DNA of 64,000 nt. Source: Octopus sinensis. Lineage: Eukaryota. The stretch spans positions 7,192,001-7,256,000 of the forward strand of contig NC_042999.1 in NCBI RefSeq assembly GCF_006345805.1, read 5' to 3'. Made by a program: the position numbers and the translations under genes. Under the pieces are notes generated by a model. That model was given only the letters and a program-made list of their open reading frames with translations. It was not told the origin of the DNA and searched no databases. Below are positions 7,767 to 63,210 of the stretch, in pieces (within the stretch, counting starts at the first letter, position 1; every line of letters begins with the position of its first letter).

Positions 7767-8177
7767 GGCGCAGGTGTGGCTGTGTGGTAAGTAGCTTGCT
7801 AACCAACCACATGGTTCCGGGTTCAATCCCACTGCGTGGCATCTTGGGCTAGTGTCTTCTGCTATAGCCTCGGGCCGACCAATGCCTTGTGAGTGGATTT
7901 GGTAGACGGAAACTGAAAGAAGCCTGTCGTATGTATGTATATATATATATGTATGTGTGTGTATATGTTTGTGTATCTGTGTTTGTCCCCCTAGCATTGT
8001 TTGACAACCGATGCTGGTGTGTTTACGTCCCCGTTACTTAGCGGTTCGGCAAAACAGACCGATAGAATAAGTACTGGGCTTACAAAGAATAAGTCCCGGG
8101 GTCGAGTTGCTCGACTAAAGGCGGTGCTCCAGCATGGCCGCAGTCAAATGACTGAAACAAGTAAAAGAGTAAAGAGT
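7767..8177 (+). mobile_element. SINE family A, full length
   Basis: Close match to the other A copies; tail motif at 8120-8158. Confidence 0.9.
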
Positions 8178-9095: not shown

Positions 9096-9510
9096 TATTT
9101 CTTTATTGCCCACAAAGGGCTAAACATAGAGGGGACAAACAAGGACAGACAAACGGATTAAGTCGATTACATCGACCCCAGTGCGTAACTGGTACTTTAT
9201 TTATCGACCCCGAAAGGATGAAAGGCAAAGTCGACCTCGGTAGAATTTGAACTCAGAACGGAACGACAGACGAAATACCTATTTCTTTACTAACCACAAG
9301 GGGCTAAACACAAAGGGGACAAACAAGGACAGACAAACGGATTAAGTCGATTATATCGACCCCAGTGCGTAACTGGTACTTAATTTATCGACCCCGAAAG
9401 GATGAAAGGCAAAGTCGACCTCGGCGGAATTTGAACTCAGAACGTAACGGGAACGAAATACTGCTGGGCATTTCGCCCGGCGTGCTAACATTTCTGCCAG
9501 CTTGCTTCTT
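9096..9510 (-). mobile_element. SINE family B2 dimer (SINE B body with LINE-like tail), 22-bp TSD
   Basis: Head plus two units of about 184 bp; ends GTGGGCAATAAAGAAATA; TC(A/G)AGCTTGTATCTC(T/C)ATTATA at 9074-9095 and 9511-9532. Confidence 0.9.
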
Positions 9511-12356: not shown

Positions 12357-12475
12357 TACATACATACATACATACATACATACACATATACATGTATGAG
12401 AGACTAGCCATATGTCTAACATTTTAATGCTAGTGGGCGAAAATATAGACGAGAATGTTAGGAGACAGAGAATGT

Positions 12476-12910
12476 AGGTGGTGGCCTGGTAGAACCTTTA
12501 GAATGCCGGGATAAATGTTTAGCGGTATTTCGTCCTTAGCTGGCAGAATCGTTAGCACGCCGGGCGAAATGCGTAGCCGTATTTCGTCCGCCGTTACGTT
12601 CTGAGTTCAAATTCCGCCGAGGATGACTTTGCCTTTCATCCTTTCGGGGTCGATAAATAAAGTACCAAACACGCACTGGGGTCGATATAATCGACTTAAT
12701 CCGTTTGTCTGTCCTTGTTTGTCCCCTCTGTGTTTAGCCCCTTCTGGGTAGTAAAGAAATAGGTATTTCGTCCTTCTTTATGTTCTGGATTCAAACTCTG
12801 CTGAGGTTGACTTTTGAGTTCGATAAAATAAGTTTCAATTAAGAATTGGTGTCGATCTAATAGAATTAACCTACAACTAAACATTGCTGTCTCTTTGCTA
12901 AAATTTGAAA
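12476..12910 (+). mobile_element. Old SINE B copy interrupted by a young SINE B2 copy (12538-12761) with 14-bp TSD
   Basis: GGTATTTCGTCCTT at 12524-12537 and 12762-12775; flanking halves are CpG-decayed and the insert is near consensus. Confidence 0.85.
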
Positions 12911-13854
12911 CCATTGTACGGAGAATATACAAGCAAATTAAGTAGGCGAAGCTGGTCGGGGGCATGTCTATGGATCAGAGTGTAGGAGTTGATTAGAAAC
13001 AAAGGGAAGAATTGCATAAAGGAAAAGATTAGATGCGGTGTGCAATAGCAATGTGGTAAAGTCAGACATACAATTGTTTCGAAAGCTTCCCTGCAAGGGT
13101 TTACACAATAACATCCTGTTTTGAAGAGTTTTGGGATTTTTTGGATAAATTTCATTTCGTTAGGGTAGGAATAAATTAATTCCAACTTGATTCTGTAGAA
13201 TTAAGATGATACAAGAACGACAGTCTAATCTTAATCAGTAAAGAACATGCTCACCAATTAAACGGATTCAAAATTGTTCTAATTAAAACCAGTGAAAGAA
13301 ATAAACAGAAAGTGACAAAAGGAGGTGTGATTGGGGGCCATTGACCAATTAAGCAAAACGAACTGAAATATTCAGAAATAAATACGAATACCGTTACATG
13401 CGATGAATAAGACACCATCAGTTATGTAGACATCATGAGTACTTGAGCAGAGAACAGGGGCATATTTCCAAATATATGTGTATGTGCATTGTTACAGAAC
13501 ATTATGATTGTTAAGTATTAAAACAACGAATTGGTATCAGATGATAGGAACAGACATGGCTTGTGTAATACAAGAGTCTATCAATATGACCAGTTACGAC
13601 TTCTTATCGTACTTGAATCGATCGATTTGATATTTGCCCAAATAAAATTGTATAACAATTATGAGATTGATACAGACCGTTTCATATTGTCTAACGAATT
13701 ATTGACCATATATTGTATCTCATAAATTTCTGCTGTCTTGAGGTGAAGGAAATAATTTTCAGTTTATAACACACACACACATACATAACACACACACACG
13801 CGCTTGCTTGCGCAAACACACAAACACACACACACTTTCTTGTATACAGATGAG

Positions 13855-15014: not shown

Positions 15015-15224
15015 TTTACTCTCTTTTACTTGTTTCAGTCATTTGACTGCGGCCATGCTGGAGCACCGCCTTTAGTCGAGCAAATCGACCCCAGGACTTA
15101 TTCTTTGTAAGCCCAGTACTTATTATATCGGTCTCTTTTGCCGAACCGCTAAGTGACGGGGACGGGGACGTAAACACACCATTATCGGTTGTCAAGCAAT
15201 GCTAGGGTGACAAACACAGACACA

Positions 15225-22884: not shown

Positions 22885-25510
22885 TTGATTTTGATTTTTT
22901 GATGATTTTTGATTTTTCCAGTTTCAGCTTATGAGCTGTGGCCATGCTGGGGCACCGCCATTTGGTGTTGCTACTTGGTTACTCATGAAGGCTTTCTAGC
23001 AGCTGCTATTTGGTGCATGAGAGAGTTCGATGCAGCTGCCCTCATCTGCCCCTCCTGCCGTGAAGTTGGTTCATCTGGGACACCTGACAGGAAGAGATCC
23101 AGCTTCATTTTAAAGACATCTGTATCCACCCCATGCAGGTCTCTCAGGTTCTTCGGGAGGATATTGAAGAGCTGTGGGCCTCGGAAGCCCAGGCTATCAC
23201 AGAATCTTGTCCTACATCTTGATGGCAAGTTTGAAGTCCTAGGCACCACGCAGTGGCGCCCAGTTCTGACATTTGCGTAACTCTCGATGCCAAGTTCAGG
23301 ACACTTCCCTCCAGGATCTTCCAGATGTATATTATGGCATATCTTTCCCGCCTACGCTCCAGGAATATAATTTTAATTTCCTGAGTCTTTCCCAGTAGCT
23401 TACATTCTGCATAGAGGCTATCTTCTTCGTGTAGCTACGTTGGATCGCCTCGAGCTCTGTGATCAACTTGACACTGGATGGTGACCATAACTGAGAGCAG
23501 TAGTCAAAGTGGCTTAGGACAAGTGTCCTCCAGAGGACCATCATGGTTTCTTGTTCTCTTGTTCTAAAGGTTCTGAGGATCCATCCGGCCAGTCGTCTAC
23601 ATTTCATTGCCAATTTAGCAACATGTACACGAAAGGTCGCGTCATCACTCATGTAAATACCTAGGTCACGCACTGATTGTGCCTCTGGGATTGCTATTCC
23701 TCCGGGTCCAGTGTATTCATTGGGTATTGCATTTAGTTTTGCATGCTGATAGTATAGAGCTTGAAACTTTTCAGCATTGAACTGCATGCTATTCTTTTCG
23801 GCCCACTTGTATATTTTGTCTAGCTCACATTGCAGGTGTTTAGTGTCCTCAGGGTTCTGTATTGCCTGTGAAACTTTTGTATCCTCTGCATAACTTGTGA
23901 TCGTGGCTCTCTGCGTGGATGAGGGCATGTCTGAGAGGGCCATTATGAACAGTAGTGGTCCCAGAACAGTGCCCTGCGGAACACCGCTCACTATTTGCGT
24001 GTTAATGGAAGTGGCCCCATTGGCCACTACCACCTGACTTCTATCTTTCAGAAAGTCCTGAAGCCATTCTCCCAGTTTTCCAACTATGTTGAGATCACGC
24101 AGTTTGTGACATATCATTCCATGATCGACTTTATCAAAGGCCTTTGCAAAGTCGAGATATATCACTTCCACATTTGAGTGGTTGAGCAGCCGTTTCAAGC
24201 ACCCAGTCATAGTGTTGTAGGAGCTGAGTTAAACAGCTTCTCCCTGGTCGGAAACCATGTTGGGTGTCGGGCAGCAAGTCATTTTCTTCAAGGAAGGTGA
24301 TCAGCTTCCTTCTGACTATTCGTTCCATGACCTTGCTGATGTGTGAGGTCAGAGAGATAGGTCTATAGTTCTTGGCTTCCGCTCTGCTACCTCCTTTATG
24401 AATGGGGCATATTTTACCTTCCTTCAGTTTTCTTGGAAGTTTGCCAGCTGCAAGGAAGCTCTGAAAGAGGAACTGCAGTGGTCTTGCTAGGACTCTCTTA
24501 CATGCTTTTAGGAGGATTGCCGGGAATCCATCGGGGCCAGTAGCTGAGTCTGTTTTCATTTCATCTATAGCCTTGATTACATCGTCTTCCTTTATATCGA
24601 TGTAATCTATCGTCGCCGCCTCTGATTTTATATCTGCAGTGGTAAAAAAGTCAGTTGGATTGGTGATTTGGAGATGCCCAAGGGTGGAGGAAAACACTCT
24701 TGAATTGCTCATTCAGTATTTCACTTACCCTCATTGGTTTTCCTGTAAGTGTGCCATCCTTTTCGAGGAGTGGCCCTATTCTACAGTGCACCGTAGCTGT
24801 TTCTTTGGCATACCTGTAGAAAGCTCTGGGTTAGATTTTATGTTGTCTATAGCCCAGGCTTCTTTGTCTGCTCTTTCCTTTTCATGGGAGAGTTTCAGAC
24901 ATTTTTCGATTTCCAACAGTTTTATTTTTAGGCGGGACTTTTCACTGCTTTCAATCTGTTTGTTTAGGCGATTTGAAAATTTTGTACGCCGGGATTTGTT
25001 CTTGTGTACAGTGGCCTTTCTCTCTGGGACATATTTGTAGCATATGGCTTGCATTACAGACATGAATTGTTGAAGTTTCACGTCGATGTCCGGCGAGGAG
25101 AGACATTTAGGCCAGTTTTGTTTGAGGATCTCTTTCTCAATTTGTTTCCAGTTTGCCTTATGGTAGTTCAAGCTAGAAAGATTCTGGGGGTTTCTTGTAG
25201 GCTGCATGTCCGTGCTCTCTTTTGGCCCGTACATGGTCAGCTCTATCATGTTGTGATCCGAGAGTAGTGTCGGTGTCACTTTCACATTATGGATGAGATC
25301 CATGTCATTTGTGAAGCAGAGATCCAGTGTGTTACCTGCCCTGGTTGGTTGGAGTATTACCTGCTCCATGTACAGGGTGTTGAAGGTTCAGGAGGGACCT
25401 CGCCTGTCCTCGTTCACATCTTGTCATTCCTGGGAGAGAAAGGCCCTCGGGCCATCTGACATTTGGCAGATTGAAGTCTCCCATAAGAAGTACACTTATG
25501 TGTTGTTCTA
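22884..25510 (-). mobile_element. 5'-truncated CR1/L2-group LINE (partial APE, RT, 3' UTR, (AAAATC)n tail)
   Basis: LMGDFNLP (about 25470, manual) and QPTRAGNTLDL (APE); NYRPISLTSHISKVMERIV, QHGFRPGRSC, YLDFAKAFDKVDH, SGVPQGTVLGPLLF, YAEDTK (RT); ORF split into 24776..25369, 24134..24712, 23332..24210 and 22983..23249. Confidence 0.95.
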
Positions 25511-26889: not shown

Positions 26890-27012
26890 ATTAGTTTCAA
26901 ATTCTGGCACAAGGCCAGCAATTTTGGGGGAGCTGTTATTCGATTAAATCGACCCCAGTGTTTAGCTGGTCCATTTTGTCCGGCGTGTTAACGATTCTGC
27001 CACTTACCGCCT
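26890..27012 (-). mobile_element. SINE family B, internally deleted copy
   Basis: Head and standard tail joined, with most of the body missing. Confidence 0.6.
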
Positions 27013-27028
27013 TATACACTCTGAATAT

Positions 27029-27327: not shown

Positions 27328-27929
27328 ACACTCTGAATATTGAGGATATATTTCATAATTTAACTTCGTAAAGGTGATATATTTAATACAAGAATTAAAA
27401 TAGGATCCCTGGACTAAGGAAATATATCATCATTCATTTTATCTTCTAATTTTTAAAATATTTTGAAAAATGAGTAGAAATTCCTGAAACAGCTGTCGTC
27501 CCTTGATGCTGATGAACCTAACATTCATGTTCACACAGTCCCTTTAATGCATGTCAATGATGTTTTGGGGTGCAAAACAACTCCGATATTCGTTCGTTTG
27601 CTTTCATTACCATTGCCATTATAGGAGTCAGCTGGATAGTGTCAATATTGTTGAAAGAAAAATCTCCTTTAAACTTGCAACAAATTTATGGCAAGCTGAC
27701 CAGACAGATTATCTCCAAATCTACTCACCTGGCTAAATTAATTTAATCAGCTTTTGCGTCATAGCCAAATGAATCTCTGCAGGTATTGTGTCCTCCTTCT
27801 CCGATTACAAGAACGAATGTCTCATCAGGCGGTGGCGCACCGAAACACCAGAGCTGCCCGAGGCAAACACCAACGTACAAGACGGAACTCCAGGACAACT
27901 GAAGCACAAACCCTCAGAACTCATACATA

Positions 27930-28146
27930 ATATTCGTTTCAAATTTTGGCACAAGGCCAACAATTTCAGGGGCGAAGTTAAGTACATCGACCCCAGTACT
28001 TCACTGGCACTTATTTTATCGACGCCGCCCTCAAAATGAAAATAACAATCGACTCCGGCGGAACTTGAACTCAGAAATTTAGCGACGGACGAAATGCCGC
28101 TAAGCAATTTGCCCGGTTTGCTAACGATTCTACCTGCTCACCGCCT
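27930..28146 (-). mobile_element. SINE family B monomer with standard tail
   Basis: Reverse-complement match; head-to-head with the array at 28184. Confidence 0.8.
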
Positions 28147-28183
28147 CAGAACTGACAAACAATATTATTTTCAGACTGCATAA

Positions 28184-28770
28184 GGCGGCGAGCTGGCAGA
28201 AACGTTAGCACGCCGGGCGAAATGCTTAGTGGTATATCGTCTGCGTTACGTTGTGAGTTCAAATTCCGCCGAGGTCGACTTTGCCTTTCATCCTTTCGGG
28301 GTCGATAAATTAAGTACCAGTTAAGCACTGGGGTCGATATAATCGACTTAATACCTATGTCTGTCCATGTTTGTCCCCTCTGTGTTTAGCCCCTTGTGGG
28401 TAATAAAGAAATAGGTATTTCGTTTGCCGCTACGTTCTGAGTTCAAAATTCCGCCGAGGTCGACTTTGTCTTTCATCCTTTCGGGGTCGATTAAATAAGT
28501 ACCAGTTACACACTGGGGCCGATATAATGGACTTAATCCGTTTGTCTGTCCCTGTTTGTCCTCTCTGTGTTTAACCCCTTGTGGGTAGTAAAGAAAGAGG
28601 TATTTCGTCTGTTGTTACGTTCTGAGTTCAAATTCCGCCGGGGTCGACTTTGCTTTTCTTCCTTTCGGGGTCGATTAAACAAGTGCTAGTTACGCACTGG
28701 GGTCGATGTAATCGACTTAATCCCGTCACACAAATTTGGGGCCTTGTGCTTCCAGTAGAAAGGATTCTTT
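28184..28770 (+). mobile_element. SINE B/B2 trimeric array (185-bp unit)
   Basis: Head, then tail/body junctions at 28413/28414 and 28598/28599; last unit ends in the standard B tail. Confidence 0.9.
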
Positions 28771-29384
28771 CTAGACTGTAGTCACATCAGTGATTTTTGC
28801 AAGGAAGCCGAATATGTAGTTGATTCGTTGATCTTAACCAGTGCTGACACCCAACAGACTCTGAAGAAAAATAAACAGAAGAACATGGCTAGACGAGAAA
28901 TTGAAACCTATTCTCTACCACAGATTCCTCACTAATAAAAGGACTAATGGGGACCTGAGTAAGTATTTTAGTAATAGATATTAAACTCAACTTAAAAAAA
29001 AACTGTTATTGATTACTAATTGAGAATTTTATGGTGGGTCATGTTGACGTTTCATACAGTATAGGTTCTATGAAATCAGACGGACCTTGTTTCTTCGTTA
29101 TTGACGTTTAATTATTATGTTACGCTTATTTTTTACGATACTTATTCAATGGTGCCAAAGGCATGTTTCCTATTTGCAGTGAATTTCAGATTATTGCATT
29201 GATATGAAGGGAAAATAAGGTCCCTCAGTTCTACGTGTCCTGATGCTAGAAACGAAGAAATTGCACTTTTATTGGGCATATACAATTGGAAATATAAATT
29301 TGGACGGCAGAAAATTTTCTATCAACTTAGAACATTAAAAAATTAATAATGAAATTAAATTAACTTTTATTTTTTATCCTTTAC

Positions 29385-36777: not shown

Positions 36778-36781
36778 AGAA

Positions 36782-37335
36782 GGCGGCGTGCTGGCAGAAA
36801 CGTTAGCACGCCGGCCGAAATGCTTAGCGGTATTTCGTCTGCCGTTGCGTTTAGAGTTCAAGTTCCGCCGAGGTCAACTTTGCCTTTCATCATTTTGGGG
36901 TCGATGAATTAAGTACCAGTTACGCACTGGAGTAGATGTAATCGACTTAATCCGTTAGTCTGTTCTTGTTTGTCCTCTCTGTGTTTAGCCCCTTGTGGGT
37001 AGTAAAGGTATAGGTATTTCGTCTGCCGCTACGTTCTGAGTTCAAATTCCGCCGAGGTAGACTTTGCCTTTCATCATTTCGGGGTCAATTAAATAAGTAC
37101 CAGTTACGCACTGGGGTTGAAGCAATCGACTTAATCCGTTAGTCTGTCCTTGTTTGTCCCCATCTGTGTTTAGCCCCTTGTGGGTAGTAAAGAAATAGAT
37201 ATTTCGTCTGCCGCTACGTTCTGGGTTCAAATTCCGCCGAGGTCGACTTTGCCTTTCATCCTTTCGGAGTCGATTAAATAAGTACCAGTTACGCACTAGG
37301 GTCGATAAAATCGACTTAATCTCTTCCCCCAGATG
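36782..37335 (+). mobile_element. SINE B/B2 trimeric array (185-bp unit)
   Basis: Junctions at 37012/37013 and 37197/37198, the same position as in the other arrays. Confidence 0.9.
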
Positions 37336-37361: not shown

Positions 37362-37765
37362 GGCTCAGGAGTGGTTGTTTGGTAAGTAGCTTGCTTATCA
37401 ACCACATGGTTTTTAGTTCAGTCCCACTGCGTGGCACCTTGGGCAGGTGTCTTCTAATATAGCCTCGGCCGACCAAGCCCTTGTGAGTGGATTTGCTTGA
37501 CGGAAACTGAAAGAAGCCCGTCGTGTATGTATATATATATATATATTTGTGTGTGTGTGTTTTTGTGTTTGTGTTTGTCCCCTCACCATCGTTTGACAAC
37601 AGACGGTAGTGTGTTTACGCCCCCGTAACTTAGTGGCTCAGTAAAAGCGTCCGATAGAAAAAGCACTAGGCTAACAAAGAATAAGTCCTGGTGTCGATTT
37701 GTTCGACCGAAAGCGGTGGTCCGGCATGGCCGAAGTCAAATGACTGACACAGAAAATAAAAGAGT
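37362..37765 (+). mobile_element. SINE family A, diverged
   Basis: Same architecture as the other A copies. Confidence 0.85.
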
Positions 37766-37768
37766 ATA

Positions 37769-37845
<77 letters not shown>

Positions 37846-48890: not shown

Positions 48891-49279
48891 ACTCTTTTAC
48901 TCTTTTACTTGTTTCAGTCATTTGACTGCGGCCATGCTGGAGCACCGCATTTAGTCGAGCAAATCGACCCCGGGACTTATTCTTTGTAAGCCTAGTACTT
49001 ATTTTATCGGTCTCTTTTGCCGAACCGCTAAGTGACGAGGACGTAAACACACCAGCATCGGTTGTCAAGACACACAAACACACACACATACATATATATA
49101 TATACATACATATATACGACAGGCTTCTTTCAGTTTCCGTCTACCAAATCCACTCAGAAGGCAATGGTCGGCCCGAGGCTATAGTAGAAGACACTTGCCC
49201 AAGATGCCACGCAGTGGGACTGAAACCGGAATTATGTGGTTGGCAAGCAAGCTACTTACCACACAGCCACTCCTGCGCC
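48891..49279 (-). mobile_element. SINE family A flanked by a 32-bp duplication
   Basis: ATAACATGTATTCTTTCTA(T/G)AATTAAGA(T/C)TTT at 48859-48890 and 49286-49317. Confidence 0.9.
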
Positions 49280-50452: not shown

Positions 50453-50880
50453 AGGCAGGAGTGGCGCAGGAGTGGCGCAGGAGTGGCTGTGTGGTAAGTA
50501 GCTTGCTAACCAACCACATGGTTCCGGGTTCAGTCCCACTGCGTGGCACCTTGGGCAAGTGTTTTCTACTATAGCCTCGGGCCGACCAATGCCTTGTGAG
50601 TGGATTTGGTAGACGGAAACTGAAAAGAAGCCCGTCGTATATATGTATATATATATGTATGTATGTGTGTGTGTGTTTGTGTGTCTGTGTTTGTCCCCTA
50701 GCATTGCTTGACAACTGATGCTGGTGTGTTTATGTCCCCGTTACTTAGCGGTTCGGCAAAAGAGACCGATAGAATAAGTACTGAGCTTACAAAAGAATAA
50801 GTCCCGGAGTCGAATTGCTCGATTAAAGGCGGTGCTCCAGCATGGCCGCAGTCAAATGACTGAAACGGGTAAAAGAGTAA
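50453..50880 (+). mobile_element. SINE family A with reiterated 11-bp 5' end
   Basis: GGC(GC)AGGAGT repeated three times before the normal head. Confidence 0.9.
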
Positions 50881-52038: not shown

Positions 52039-52080
52039 ATCTATCTATCTATCTCTCTATCTATCTATCTATCTATCTAC

Positions 52081-52546
52081 CAGAAATTGAAAACAGAGGG
52101 TTACCCACTTGCAAACAAATGTGGTAACATAAAACAATATTGACCAAGGTTACCGTGGTCTTTTTCGTAGGCTTTTCTTCCCACGGATAAACCTTACTTG
52201 CTTTCCCCTTTACACCATATATCATAACACTGTGATACACGATCCCTATTGATCGTTTTTTTTCCTCTTCCCCTTTTCTTCTTTTTTCATTTATCTTTTC
52301 TTTTGTTCCTTTTCCTTTTCTTCTTTTTTTATTTTTATTTTTTATTTTTTATTATATTTTTTTGTTCTTTTCTTCCCTTTTACTATCCCTCTTGATCGAA
52401 AACCTACCCCACCCCTTTTTTTTGTTTCTTTTGTTTTTTGTTTTTTTCATCCCCCAAAAGAAAAGCTCTACCTTGTAACTTGTCCCATCTGTGTGCAGCC
52501 CTGTGTGGCCAATAAAGAAACTTATCTATCTATCTATCTATCTATA

Positions 52547-52592
<46 letters not shown>

Positions 52593-53037
52593 CCAGAAAT
52601 TGAAAACAGAGGGTTACCTACTTGCAAACAAATGTGGTAACATATAACAATATTGACCAATGTTACCGTGGTCTTTTTCGTAGGCTTTTCTTCCCACGGA
52701 TAAACCTTACTTGCTTTCCCCTTTACACCATATATCATAACACTGTGATACACGATCCCTATTGATCGTTTTTTTTCCTCTTCCCCTTTTCTTCTTCTTT
52801 TTTCATTTATCTTTTCTTTTGTTCCTTTTCCTTTTCTTCTTTTTTTATTTTTATTTTTTTATTTTTTATTATATTTTTTTGTTCTTTTCTTCCCTTTTAC
52901 TATCCCTCTTGATCGAAAACCTACCCCACCCCTTTTTTTTGTTTCTTTTGTTTTTTGTTTTTTTCATCCCCCAAAAGAAAAGCTCTACCTTGTAACTTGT
53001 CCCATCTGTGTGCAGCCCTGTGTGGCCAATAAAGAAA
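52081..53037 (+). repeat. Tandem duplication of a unit of about 440 bp separated by (TATC)n; resembles a LINE 3' end
   Basis: Units 52081-52520 and 52594-53037 are nearly identical, T-rich, and end in AATAAAGAAA before (TATC)n. LINE identity is inferred. Confidence 0.85.
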
Positions 53038-53038
53038 C

Positions 53039-53082
<44 letters not shown>

Positions 53083-58391: not shown

Positions 58392-58859
58392 CTACTTTAA
58401 ATCCGTTAAGTAGTTAGTATCATTGTTTTGACGATGAACGAAATACGCGAGCCATTTTCCGTATTTTCTTTTTGAATGTAGACATTAGCTTTAAACTTTT
58501 ATTCCCTGCTAGTGCAGCCTTTGTTGCGTGTTAGAATAGATATCTCTTCGTTTACATAGCAACTCGAGTATTTTTGAAAATATATGCGGATACTTTTAGA
58601 ATTCACAGCCGGAATAATTCGAAAATGTGTGGGATCCTGAAGCCGGGTATATCGATGTAGATAATCATAGCTAGAATAACTATCACCATGTTATAGCGTC
58701 GAAAATTCACCACCTGATGTTTCATCCAATGTCGAACTTCCTACTGGTAAAAAGAGAGACAGGTGTGACGTGAAACATGTAGGGTGTTCATGCTATATAT
58801 TTCTTGTCTAACATGTCTAATGACATATATATATATATTATATATACATATATATATAT

Positions 58860-58917
58860 TAAAATACCATGCATATATGGATACAGGACGTCACCAACAG
58901 TGCAAATAACATACATA

Positions 58918-58959
<42 letters not shown>

Positions 58960-59032
58960 ATATTTCGGAATGGTCATATTGCCAGTTTAGCCAACAAATA
59001 TTTAAACGTATATATATATATATATATGCATA

Positions 59033-59063
<31 letters not shown>

Positions 59064-59121
59064 TAAAATACCATGCATATATGGATACAGGACGTCACCA
59101 ACAGTGCAAATAACATACATA

Positions 59122-59163
<42 letters not shown>

Positions 59164-59260
59164 ATATTTCGGAATGGTCATATTGCCAGTTTAGCCAACA
59201 AATATTTAAACGTATATATATATATATATATATGCATATATATATATATATATACACTAT
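58860..59260. repeat. Tandem duplication with 204-bp period, unique cores separated by (TA)n
   Basis: AAAATACCATGC.. at 58861 and 59065; ORFs 58869 and 59073 are near-identical. Confidence 0.9.
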
Positions 59261-59299
59261 GTATATATAAATGTGTGTTTTTGTGTATGTTTGTATCTG

Positions 59300-61883: not shown

Positions 61884-62279
61884 CAAATATATATACATAT
61901 ATATACAGACACACATACACAGATACTCCTATACATACATATTCACACGTCACACTAACGTAAGGTAGAGATTGATAGGTACATATATACGTAATACACT
62001 GGCATAACCGTTCATAAATACCTAGATGAATATTTTGATATCCATGTTTGTTTGTATGTTTCTTTAATAACACTTTCTATCTCTCGCTCTCTCCTTCACT
62101 ATCTCTCGCTCTCGGACACACACTCCCTCGCGCCCCTCCTCTCTCTCTACACACACAACACACACACACGTATCTGAATGTATCTATCTATCGGACACTT
62201 TCCACTCATCTCAATAATATTGCATAATATGATGCTTTGCTTACACTGATTTATACAAAATATACCGCTACAAACTAAT

Positions 62280-63210
62280 ACCTACATACATACATACATA
62301 CATACATACATACATACATACATACACACATACATACATACATACATACATACATACATACATACATACATACATACATACACACCTACACACATACATA
62401 CATACATACATACATACATACATACATACATACATACATACACACATACATACACACCTACACACATACATACATACGTACATACATACATACATACATG
62501 CATACATACATACATACATACATACATACATACATACATACATACACAAACACATACATACATACACACATACATGCATGCATACATACATACTTACATA
62601 CATTCATGCATGCATACATACATACATACATACATACATACACGCATGCATACATACATACATACATACATACATACATGCATACATACATACACACATA
62701 CATGCATGCATACATACATACATACATACACACCCATGAATACATACATACATACATACTTGCATGCATACATACATACATACACACACACATACATACA
62801 TACATACATACATGCATGCATGCATACATACATACATTCACACACACATGCATACATACATACATACATACATACATACATGCATACATACATACATACA
62901 TACACACCCATGCATACATACATACACACATACATGCATGCATACATACATGCATGCATGCATACATACATACATGCATACATACATACATACATACATA
63001 CATGCATACATACATACATGCATGCATACATACACACACATACATACATGCATACATACATAAATACATACATGCATACATACATACATACATACATGCA
63101 TGCACACATACATACATGCATGCATACATACATACATGCATACATAAATACATACATGCATACATACATACATACATACATATATACATACATGCACGTA
63201 TACATACATT
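62280..63210. repeat. Degenerate (TACA)n/(TGCA) microsatellite field of about 930 bp
   Basis: Direct inspection; source of the long HTYI/MYVC pseudo-ORFs. Confidence 0.95.

What the first reader, a model, noticed from the sequence alone, without database searches (positions are those of the whole stretch)
12476..12910. A SINE that appears to insert at a fixed site inside its own family
Seen: an old, CpG-decayed SINE B copy (head 12476-12537, rest 12762-12910) is interrupted by a near-consensus 224-bp copy (12538-12761) ending in a different tail, ...GTAGTAAAGAAATA. GGTATTTCGTCCTT (14 bp) is duplicated at both ends. The duplicate carries the host's own CCTT variant, which neither the insert nor the other arrays have, so it reads as a true TSD. 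The same tail|GGTATTTCGT junction recurs at 9279/9280, 28413/28414, 28598/28599, 37012/37013 and 37197/37198 (one or two substitutions in some). Established: Tx1-clade (L1 group) and R2-type LINEs target fixed positions in multicopy sequences. Inference: subfamily B2 is mobilised by an endonuclease that prefers a site between the A and B boxes of SINE B, so it grows arrays inside its own relatives. I know of no description of a self-targeting SINE.
Basis: partly seen in the sequence, partly recalled or inferred. Interest (0 to 1): 0.85.

Follow-up and report, generated by a model that had tools for sequence, protein, structure and literature searches.

The report
Octopus SINE with self-insertion hotspot
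In an octopus genome segment, one short retroposon copy sits inside an older relative at exactly the position where the same family's head-to-tail arrays are joined, which suggests (on one clear case only) that this SINE tends to land at a fixed spot in its own family, as human Alu elements are already known to do.

Summary
A 224-bp "B2" copy (12538-12761) splits an older B-family SINE. It is flanked by a perfect 14-bp duplication, GGTATTTCGTCCTT, which carries a host-only variant. The same tail|GGTATTTCGT junction occurs six times in the window; none are expected by chance. Six of seven B2 tails are followed by it, and the seventh by an ordinary 22-bp target duplication.

New findings:
- The junction lies at the boundary between the loop and the 3' arm of a conserved 13-bp hairpin in the tRNA-like head. 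The 14-bp duplication is essentially that 3' arm.
- The arrays differ from the nested copy: they have no duplicated head piece and no internal duplication.
- Two arrays share one three-unit layout that ends in a different, B-type tail, so they may be copies of one composite element.
- Units within an array are as diverged from each other as units in different arrays.

A retrotransposition-linked, site-directed process fits best (confidence about 0.45). Reverse-transcriptase template jumping or composite masters remain possible.

A dedicated Tx1- or R2-like endonuclease is not shown. One B2 insertion is off-target, and no partner LINE is in the window.

"Self-targeting SINE" is not unprecedented: Alu has a single-nucleotide, sense-oriented self-insertion hotspot. 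No further octopus DNA was reachable, so the genome-wide test remains undone.

The parts
12472..12537 (+). 5' piece of the old B-family host SINE (family positions 1-63). Its last 14 nt (12524-12537) are the upstream copy of the target-site duplication.
   Evidence: (nhmmer, model positions 3-64).
12538..12761 (+). Inserted B2 copy (alpha type). It starts about 9 nt inside the family's 5' end and ends in the B2 tail ...GTAGTAAAGAAATA.
   Evidence: 18 CpG, 4.4% from the local consensus.
12762..12917 (+). 3' piece of the old host, running from family position 50 to the B-type tail (...AAAATTTGAAACCATTGT). The downstream copy of the duplication is at 12762-12775.
9096..9510 (-). Dimer C: [head + beta unit + B2 tail, 9510-9280][alpha unit + B2 tail, 9279-9096]. 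A 22-bp target duplication flanks the whole dimer (9532-9511 and 9095-9074).
   Evidence: and (20/22 identical, 0 of 500 shuffles).
28182..28763 (+). Array A: [head + beta unit + B2 tail, 28182-28413][gamma unit + B2 tail, 28414-28598][gamma unit + B-type tail, 28599-28763]. A possible degraded duplication, ATT.TTT..AGACTG, lies at 28164-28178 and 28764-28778.
   Evidence: and (12/15 identical, p 0.09).
36780..37333 (+). Array B, with the same layout as A: [head + beta unit, 36780-37012][gamma unit, 37013-37197][gamma unit + short B-type tail, 37198-~37333]. A SINE A insertion follows at 37363.
12505..12537 (+). The target hairpin in the host: a 13-nt 5' arm, the loop TAGC, and the 3' arm GGTATTTCGTCCT. 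The insertion junction is at the loop|3'-arm boundary, and the duplication is roughly the 3' arm.
   Evidence: RNA fold of the family head, -38.4 kcal/mol, z = -2.2; 8-13 of 13 positions paired in all copies, with a compensatory change in the young insert.
52468..52521 (+). 3' end of an unrelated element whose last ~40 nt resemble the B2 tail (...GCCAATAAAGAAAC), followed by (TATC)n. A second copy lies at 52985-53038. This indicates the B2 tail is a shared LINE-type 3' module.

Best explanation
B2 is a tail-swapped derivative of the tRNA-derived octopus SINE "B". It keeps the B head and body, but a 59-nt LINE-type 3' module ending ...AAAGAAATA replaces the B tail.

B2 copies enter the genome by target-primed reverse transcription. 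They show a marked preference, in the sense orientation, for one phosphodiester bond inside B-family SINEs. That bond is the boundary between the loop (TAGC) and the 3' arm (GGTATTTCGTC...) of the 13-bp anticodon-like hairpin, between the A and B boxes.

In a diverged host, the 5' end is joined conventionally. This leaves a 14-bp duplication of the 3' arm and a duplicated head piece (locus 12472-12917).

In a closely related host, the new cDNA is homologous to the host head. The 5' end is then joined through that homology, or the two near-identical heads collapse later. The result is a seamless head + (unit)n array inside the host's own target duplication. Composite elements made this way can then be copied as wholes, which may be the case for arrays A and B.

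Shown: the nested insertion, its duplication, the shared coordinate, the hairpin, and the array anatomy.

Inferred: the preference itself, the homology-guided 5' resolution, and the determinant of the preference. That determinant could be a moderately specific endonuclease meeting a very abundant target, pairing of a read-through RNA 3' end with B-family DNA, or tethering to the Pol III complex.
For: 1. The nested insertion has a perfect 14/14 duplication carrying the host-specific CCTT. The host aligns continuously once the insert is removed.
2. That duplication starts at the same nucleotide as all five array junctions.
3. The unit's 3' boundary equals the 3' end used in two independent insertions that have flanking duplications, at 9096 and 12761. 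An arbitrary tandem duplication would not respect it.
4. The junction appears in at least four different contexts: beta|gamma, gamma|gamma-with-B-tail, beta|alpha, and alpha|old host. One inherited junction does not explain them all.
5. The last unit of arrays A and B carries a B tail while the inner units carry B2 tails. This is what B2 copies entering a B host would produce.
6. All three arrays begin with a complete head. No headless unit starting at the junction is seen.
7. Of the six old B monomers, only the one that was hit has the exact GGTATTTCG motif.
8. My estimate of a chance hit at this coordinate in the sense orientation is about 12 sites / (2 x 64,000), or roughly 1e-4 per insertion.
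9. There is a precedent: Alu has a single-nucleotide, sense-oriented self-insertion hotspot (PMC2836564).
Against: - Only one case has a duplication.
- The arrays lack the signature of the nested case, so an extra step has to be assumed.
- Arrays A and B share their layout and unit-type order, which suggests a composite master rather than independent growth.
- Distances between units are star-like, at 8-12% both within and between arrays, with no clear age gradient.
- One of the two B2 insertions with readable flanks is at an unrelated site.
- Five other B monomers in the window are uninterrupted.
- There is no microhomology between the tail end (ATA) and the target (GGT).
- No partner LINE with this tail is in the window.
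- No genome-wide data could be obtained.
Confidence: 0.45

Rival explanations
1. Template jumping during one retrotransposition event. The reverse transcriptase copies a SINE RNA whose 5' end lies at the hairpin loop (for example, an RNA cleaved in the anticodon-like loop). It runs off that end and continues on the 3' end of another B2 RNA. This builds head-less units behind a final full-length copy, inside a single target duplication. The nested copy at 12538 is then an unrelated coincidence.
For: - Dimer C is flanked by a single 22-bp duplication, and array A possibly by a single one too.
- The junctions are exact 3'-end|fixed-5'-position joins with no extra bases.
- Units in an array look equally old.
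- The junction sits at the loop of a strong, conserved hairpin.
- End-to-end template jumping is an established property of non-LTR reverse transcriptases such as R2 (my knowledge).
Against: - It cannot produce the locus at 12472-12917, where host DNA is duplicated from the same nucleotide. That match would have to be a coincidence of about 1e-4.
- No headless copy or array starting at the junction is present.
- Arrays A and B would need a B-tailed RNA to be used first and B2 RNAs afterwards.
- A reverse transcriptase is expected to stall at the base of a hairpin, not after crossing its 3' arm.
Confidence: 0.2
2. Composite masters. The tail|GGTATTTCG junction arose once or a few times by some illegitimate event. 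Dimeric and trimeric elements carrying it were then amplified as units from their Pol III head. The recurrences in the window are copies by descent, and the nested copy is a coincidence.
For: - Arrays A and B, 8.6 kb apart with unrelated flanks, share the same three-unit layout, the same unit-type order (beta, gamma, gamma), and a final B-type tail.
- Whole arrays appear to sit inside a single duplication.
- No TTTT terminator occurs within a unit, so a Pol III transcript could span an array (sequence).
Against: - It does not explain why dimer C has a different second unit and ends in a B2 tail.
- It does not explain why the nested copy's host duplication begins at the same base.
- The origin of the junction itself still needs a site-specific event.
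- No mutation is shared uniquely by corresponding units of A and B.
Confidence: 0.2
3. One reading: B2 is mobilised by a dedicated sequence-specific endonuclease of the Tx1, R1 or R2 kind, whose recognition site is this position in SINE B.
For: - 3' junctions are precise in 6 of 6 cases.
- The only old monomer with the exact motif is the one that was hit.
- Octopus vulgaris has recently active L1-Tx1, Dong-R4 and R2 families (PMC13282606).
Against: - Dimer C inserted at an unrelated site (TATAATGGAG...) through the same tail.
- Duplications of 14-22 bp look like ordinary APE-type staggered cuts.
- No LINE with this tail is in the window.
- The related tail at 52468 is associated with (TATC)n, not with SINE B.
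Confidence: 0.12
4. Ordinary DNA-level tandem duplication or unequal crossing-over within or between SINE copies. This is the explanation usually given for SINE arrays in bivalves and squamates.
For: - The layout (first unit with a full head, inner units truncated at the same head position, last unit with a complete tail, one duplication around the whole) matches the TSD1-(SINE)n-TSD1 arrays of Scapharca broughtonii (PMC11481361).
- Unequal recombination is also proposed for squamate SINE-derived satellites (PMC10702118).
Against: - Inner units end in a complete, different functional tail (B2) that the last unit lacks. The array is therefore not a duplication of a contiguous segment of one SINE.
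- The unit boundary equals a retrotransposition 3' end.
- Units within an array are no more alike than units of different arrays.
- It cannot produce the nested locus.
Confidence: 0.05

Closest known systems
Alu self-insertion hotspot (Levy, Schwartz & Ast 2010, PMC2836564)
   Same: A SINE inserts into older members of its own family at a single nucleotide position and in the sense orientation. It is detected as nested copies with target duplications.
   Different: The Alu hotspot follows the A-rich linker. It is explained by the L1 endonuclease site plus pairing of poly(A) with poly(T). Here the tail is not A-rich, there is no microhomology at the junction, the site is a hairpin-loop boundary in the tRNA-like head, and seamless tandem arrays share the coordinate. 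Alu has about 16,000 documented cases; here there is one.
Target-specific non-LTR retrotransposons (Tx1 and R1 clades; R2, R4 and Utopia) and their non-autonomous derivatives (R2 SIDEs, PMC3414825)
   Same: Precise 3' junctions at a fixed position in a multicopy sequence. Non-autonomous elements inherit the specificity through a shared 3' end.
   Different: No partner LINE was identified. At least one off-target B2 insertion exists. The target would be the element's own family rather than an rRNA or snRNA gene, a microsatellite, or a DNA transposon (Tx1L in Tx1D; my knowledge).
TSD1-(SINE)n-TSD1 tandem SINE arrays in the blood clam Scapharca broughtonii (PMC11481361)
   Same: The anatomy is almost identical: a full head only on the first unit, the same head truncation on all later units, a complete tail on the last unit, and one duplication around the array.
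   Different: In the clam, inner units are described as truncated in the tail as well. Here inner units carry a complete alternative tail ending at a proven retrotransposition 3' end. The clam arrays were attributed to unequal recombination, and no nested case with a duplication was reported.
SINE-derived satellites of squamates (PMC10702118)
   Same: Tandem repeats built from portions of SINEs. Same-locus insertion is mentioned there as one possible first step.
   Different: Those are long, partly homogenised arrays. Here the arrays are 2-3 units long, dispersed, and not homogenised.
Metazoan retrozymes / hammerhead-bearing tandem repeats
   Same: Short (about 180 bp) dispersed tandem units of a non-autonomous retroelement.
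   Different: No self-cleaving ribozyme family matched the array, even at E <= 10.

Membership tests
tRNA-derived SINE (B family, B and B2 subfamilies) | A tRNA-related head with internal Pol III A-box-like and B-box-like motifs | tested here: inconclusive
   A B-box-like GAGTTCAAATTCC and an A-box-like TGGCAGAAACG can be read in the sequence. The head folds into an acceptor-like stem plus a long anticodon-like hairpin. ARAGORN calls no tRNA.
tRNA-derived SINE (B family, B and B2 subfamilies) | Short, dispersed, multicopy, flanked by target-site duplications, with no coding capacity | tested here: met
   There are 12 loci in 64 kb. Duplications of 14 and 22 bp are found. Only short spurious ORFs are present.
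tRNA-derived SINE (B family, B and B2 subfamilies) | 3' module shared with a partner LINE | tested here: inconclusive
   The B2 tail resembles the 3' end of another element at 52468-52521. No coding LINE with this tail is in the window. The LINE at 23332-25369 has a different 3' end, which matches SINE A instead.
Site-specific retrotransposon system (Tx1/R1/R2 type) | The great majority of copies occupy the same position of one target sequence | not testable with these tools
   This needs the whole genome. No octopus DNA exists in the searchable collections. In the window, 6 of 7 tails abut the site, but only one of those is an independent insertion with a duplication.
Site-specific retrotransposon system (Tx1/R1/R2 type) | No, or very rare, insertions elsewhere | tested here: not met
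   Dimer C (9096-9510) used the same tail at an unrelated site and has a 22-bp duplication.
Site-specific retrotransposon system (Tx1/R1/R2 type) | A partner LINE encoding a sequence-specific endonuclease | not tested
   No candidate partner is in the window.
TSD1-(SINE)n-TSD1 tandem SINE array | One duplication flanks the array; only the first unit has a full head; later units are truncated at one head position; the last unit has a complete tail | tested here: met
   The flanking duplication is clear for C, weak for A, and doubtful for B.
Ribozyme-bearing tandem retroelement (retrozyme) | A self-cleaving ribozyme in each unit | tested here: not met
   Rfam cmscan of 27900-28900 at E <= 10 gave no hammerhead, HDV-like, twister or other ribozyme.

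The most novel reading that the evidence does not exclude
A SINE subfamily homes, by target-primed reverse transcription, into one bond of a conserved hairpin in its own family's tRNA-like head. Because insert and host are homologous, each hit is resolved into one more seamless tandem unit. This would be a retrotranspositional route, rather than a recombinational one, from dispersed SINE to tandem array.
Probability: 0.3. Interest if true: 0.75.

Novelty: new variant of a known kind. Interest (0 to 1): 0.5.

Why it matters
SINE tandem arrays with exactly this anatomy are reported in clams, potato and squamates. They are attributed, without direct evidence, to unequal recombination.

A nested copy that still carries its target duplication at the array junction would be the first direct hint that such arrays can be built by repeated retrotransposition into a fixed site. 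That would give a testable mechanism for how dispersed SINEs seed satellites.

It would also extend the Alu-type self-insertion hotspot to a SINE without an A-rich tail, and to a structured (hairpin) target. This bears on what non-L1 endonucleases and reverse transcriptases recognise. SINEs make up about 12% of octopus genomes, so such a bias would shape a sizeable part of the genome.

Tried and rejected
1. Getting more of the genome.
   - Exact-pattern scans for the tail or body found nothing: metagenome contigs (twice), GTDB genomes and IMG/VR.
   - A protein search with an 84-aa spurious ORF spanning a junction found a single UniRef entry, from Octopus bimaculoides, whose contig is not on record.
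   - A search with the window's LINE reverse transcriptase gave one 2-kb metagenome contig and an Argonauta hians locus. That locus holds only a distant relative of the SINE.
   - Sequence strings are not found in the paper library. The O. vulgaris repeat paper has no library among its held supplements.
2. Ribozyme or retrozyme idea. No Rfam ribozyme matched. The only hits are spurious miRNA-like matches, caused by two inverted SINE heads.
3. Recent in-situ tandem duplication. Rejected, because units in one array are as diverged from each other as units in different arrays.
4. Microhomology priming, as for Alu. The tail end ATA and the target GGT share nothing. GAAATA is complementary to TATTTC on the wrong strand for priming.
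5. DNA cruciform at the target. The host's own hairpin has only 6 of 13 Watson-Crick pairs, so this is unlikely.
6. Phylogeny of the units, to separate the composite-master model from independent insertions. The tree is an unresolved star.
7. The host's own target duplication as an age marker. It is not significant.

Full report
**What the window is.** The sequence is AT-rich (about 37% GC) and crowded with microsatellites and tRNA-derived SINEs. The only protein-database relative of an ORF read through the repeat is an uncharacterised Octopus bimaculoides protein. The nearest relative of the window's LINE reverse transcriptase in an annotated genome is from the octopod Argonauta hians. The window is therefore from an octopus, though the species was not determined.

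**Checking the observation.** A 224-bp copy (12538-12761) ends in ...GTAGTAAAGAAATA. It lies between two identical copies of GGTATTTCGTCCTT, at 12524-12537 and 12762-12775. The match is 14/14, and none of 500 shuffles reaches that score. The CCTT ending occurs in neither the insert nor any other unit.

When the two old pieces are joined with one copy of the repeat, they align without a break at the site to five other old copies of the family. This is a genuine nested insertion with a target-site duplication.

The tail occurs seven times. The seventh tail (9096, minus strand) is followed by a 22-bp target duplication, 20/22 identical, that encloses a whole dimer.

**Inventory.** An HMM search finds 12 loci of the family. 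They comprise:
- six old monomers with a different "B" tail (...GGCCTTGTGCCAAAATTTGAAAC), one of them the host at 12472-12917;
- one further B copy with an internal deletion;
- dimer C (9096-9510, minus strand);
- arrays A (28182-28763) and B (36780-~37333);
- two short matches that are really a domain shared with another SINE.

The family's true 5' end is AAGGCGGCG, about 9 nt upstream of AGCTGG.

B2 differs from B by its last 59 nt. That module resembles the 3' end of an unrelated element at 52468-52521 and 52985-53038, which is followed by (TATC)n. It is therefore a swapped-in LINE-type tail.

**Anatomy of the site.** The head folds into a 13-bp hairpin: CGGGCGAAAUGCU, loop UAGC, GGUAUUUCGUCUG (-38.4 kcal/mol, z = -2.2). 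The stem is kept in every copy, with 8-13 of 13 positions able to pair. The young insert carries a compensatory change at the top of the stem, U.G to G-C.

Every junction, including the one at 12761/12762, lies between the last loop base and the first base of the 3' arm. The 14-bp duplication is that 3' arm plus one base.

**How the arrays differ from the nested copy.** The nested locus reads: host 1-63, insert 10-224, host 50-end. The arrays read: head, then units of positions 50-224 joined tail to GGTATTTCG. They have no duplicated head piece and no internal duplication.

- In A and B, the last unit leaves the B2 sequence at position ~165 and continues into a B-type tail.
- In C, the last unit ends in the B2 tail and is followed by the flanking duplication.
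- Array A may sit inside one degraded duplication (12/15 identical, p 0.09). The evidence for B is doubtful.
- One short motif sorts the units into types: beta (GATAAATTAAG) in the first unit of all three arrays; gamma (GATTAAATAAG) in units 2 and 3 of A and B; alpha (GATAAATAAAG) in C2 and in the nested insert. Old copies have GATAAAATAAG.
- Units within an array differ by 8-12%, as much as units of different arrays. The unit tree is an unresolved star.
- The nested insert is 4.4% from the local consensus, inside the range of the array units at 2-9%.
- CpG depletion is weak in this genome. The window's observed/expected ratio is 0.8, and most old copies are above 1. "CpG-decayed" is therefore a poor age argument, except for the host at 12762-12913.

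**What this implies.**
- Recent in-situ tandem duplication is excluded by the within-array divergence.
- Simple duplication of a contiguous piece of one SINE is excluded. The inner units carry a complete tail that the last unit lacks. The unit's 3' boundary is exactly the 3' end used in two independent insertions with duplications (9096 and 12761).
- The only novel adjacency is B2 tail-end next to position 50. It appears in at least four sequence contexts: beta|gamma, gamma|gamma-with-B-tail, beta|alpha, and alpha|old host. Some site-specific, retrotransposition-linked process is therefore needed.

Three candidate processes fit.
1. Target-primed insertion at that bond of B-family DNA.
2. Template jumping of the reverse transcriptase from an RNA 5' end at that position onto the 3' end of another B2 RNA.
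3. A junction made rarely and then amplified in composite masters.

Only the first explains the nested locus, where host DNA is duplicated starting from the same base. With about 12 such sites in 64 kb, I estimate that a random insertion hits one in the sense orientation with probability of about 1e-4.

The first process also fits four further points:
- All arrays start with a complete head, and no headless unit is seen.
- B hosts end arrays whose inner units have B2 tails.
- The youngest-looking unit type is next to the head in all three arrays.
- The one old monomer that was hit is the only one of six with the exact GGTATTTCG motif.

To derive arrays from such insertions, one must assume that the cDNA pairs with a similar host's head so that no duplication is made, or that the two near-identical heads collapse afterwards. 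This is plausible but not shown.

The shared layout of A and B argues that at least these two are copies of one composite element, so the six junctions are not six events. I put site-directed insertion at about 0.45, template jumping at about 0.2, and composite masters with a coincidental nest at about 0.2.

**What is not supported.** Nothing shows a dedicated Tx1-, R1- or R2-type endonuclease.
- Dimer C used the same tail at an unrelated site.
- The duplications are 14-22 bp, as for ordinary APE-type staggered cuts (established knowledge).
- The window's coding LINE (23332-25369, minus strand; RVT_1 and an endonuclease remnant) has a different 3' end, which matches SINE A instead.

A moderately specific enzyme meeting a very abundant target would suffice. 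So would pairing of a read-through RNA with B-family DNA: no TTTT terminator occurs within a unit. Octopus vulgaris does have recently active L1-Tx1, Dong-R4 and R2 families (PMC13282606).

No known ribozyme is present in the array.

**Comparison with what is known.** The statement that no self-targeting SINE has been described is not correct. Alu elements insert into Alu at a single-nucleotide hotspot in the sense orientation, with 15,759 cases reported (PMC2836564). That hotspot is explained by an L1 cleavage site and poly(A) pairing.

Arrays with nearly the same anatomy (TSD1-(SINE)n-TSD1) are described in the clam Scapharca broughtonii and attributed to unequal recombination (PMC11481361). 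SINE-derived satellites are described in squamates (PMC10702118).

If the preference is real, three things would be new: the site is a hairpin-loop boundary in the tRNA-like head, the SINE has no A-rich tail, and the nested insertion is linked to seamless arrays.

**Limits.** The decisive test is a genome-wide table of what follows the tail, plus the distribution of nested insertions along B. It could not be run. No octopus DNA is present in the searchable nucleotide collections, and the protein-based routes returned almost nothing from octopus.

**Verdict.** It is a new variant of a known kind, of moderate interest pending a census.

Noticed in passing
window 26894-27013 (-): A B-family copy with an internal deletion of about 90 nt. 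Its 5' breakpoint falls at the top of the same hairpin (...GGACAAAATGG|ACCAGC...), 4-5 nt from the insertion/junction site. This is a second rearrangement at this spot.
   Followed up: partly
window 27936-28147 (-) and 28182-28413 (+): An old B copy and array A lie head to head, 34 bp apart, and form a long inverted repeat. This alone produced sub-threshold miRNA-precursor-like Rfam hits (MIR898, MIR8675). Three B-family loci lie within 1.9 kb here.
   Followed up: partly
window 52080-53082: An element of about 445 bp, T-rich and ending ...GCCAATAAAGAAAC, is present twice in tandem. Each copy is bounded by (TCTA/TATC)n. This could be insertion into, or generation of, the microsatellite, or a plain 517-bp tandem duplication. 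Its 3' end resembles the B2 tail.
   Followed up: partly
window 22890-25369 (-) and SINE A copies (e.g. 37363-37775, 7768-8171, 50475-50879): A degraded APE-type LINE (reverse transcriptase in three frames, plus an endonuclease remnant). About 50 nt of its 3' end are roughly 80% identical to the 3' ends of the abundant ~400-bp "SINE A" (about 12 copies in the window). This looks like a LINE-SINE partnership.
   Followed up: partly
window 15062-15133 and 48938-49012: The B-family HMM (positions ~122-185) also matches inside SINE A copies. The two SINE families therefore share a central domain (...AAGTACCAG...GGGGTCGAT...).
   Followed up: no
L002 20736-20867 (Argonauta hians BAAFZT010000013.1): A distant relative of the SINE, about 70% identical over positions 68-197. 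The match covers the body and runs into the first half of the B2-type tail region. That junction may therefore be older than the genus Octopus.
   Followed up: no
window 12570-12590: The young insert has GCG TAGC CGT where the other copies have GCT TAGC GGT. This is a compensatory change at the top of the hairpin (13/13 positions paired), which suggests the stem matters for the RNA.
   Followed up: partly
window 37003-37012: The tail of unit B1 reads AAAGGTATA instead of AAAGAAATA. It looks like a small copy of the adjacent GGTAT of the next unit.
   Followed up: no
window 62278-63209 and 58824-59269: A 930-bp (ATAC)n tract and a 204-bp tandem repeat of 2.2 copies. Long microsatellites generate most of the window's "ORFs" of 120 aa or more.
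   Followed up: no
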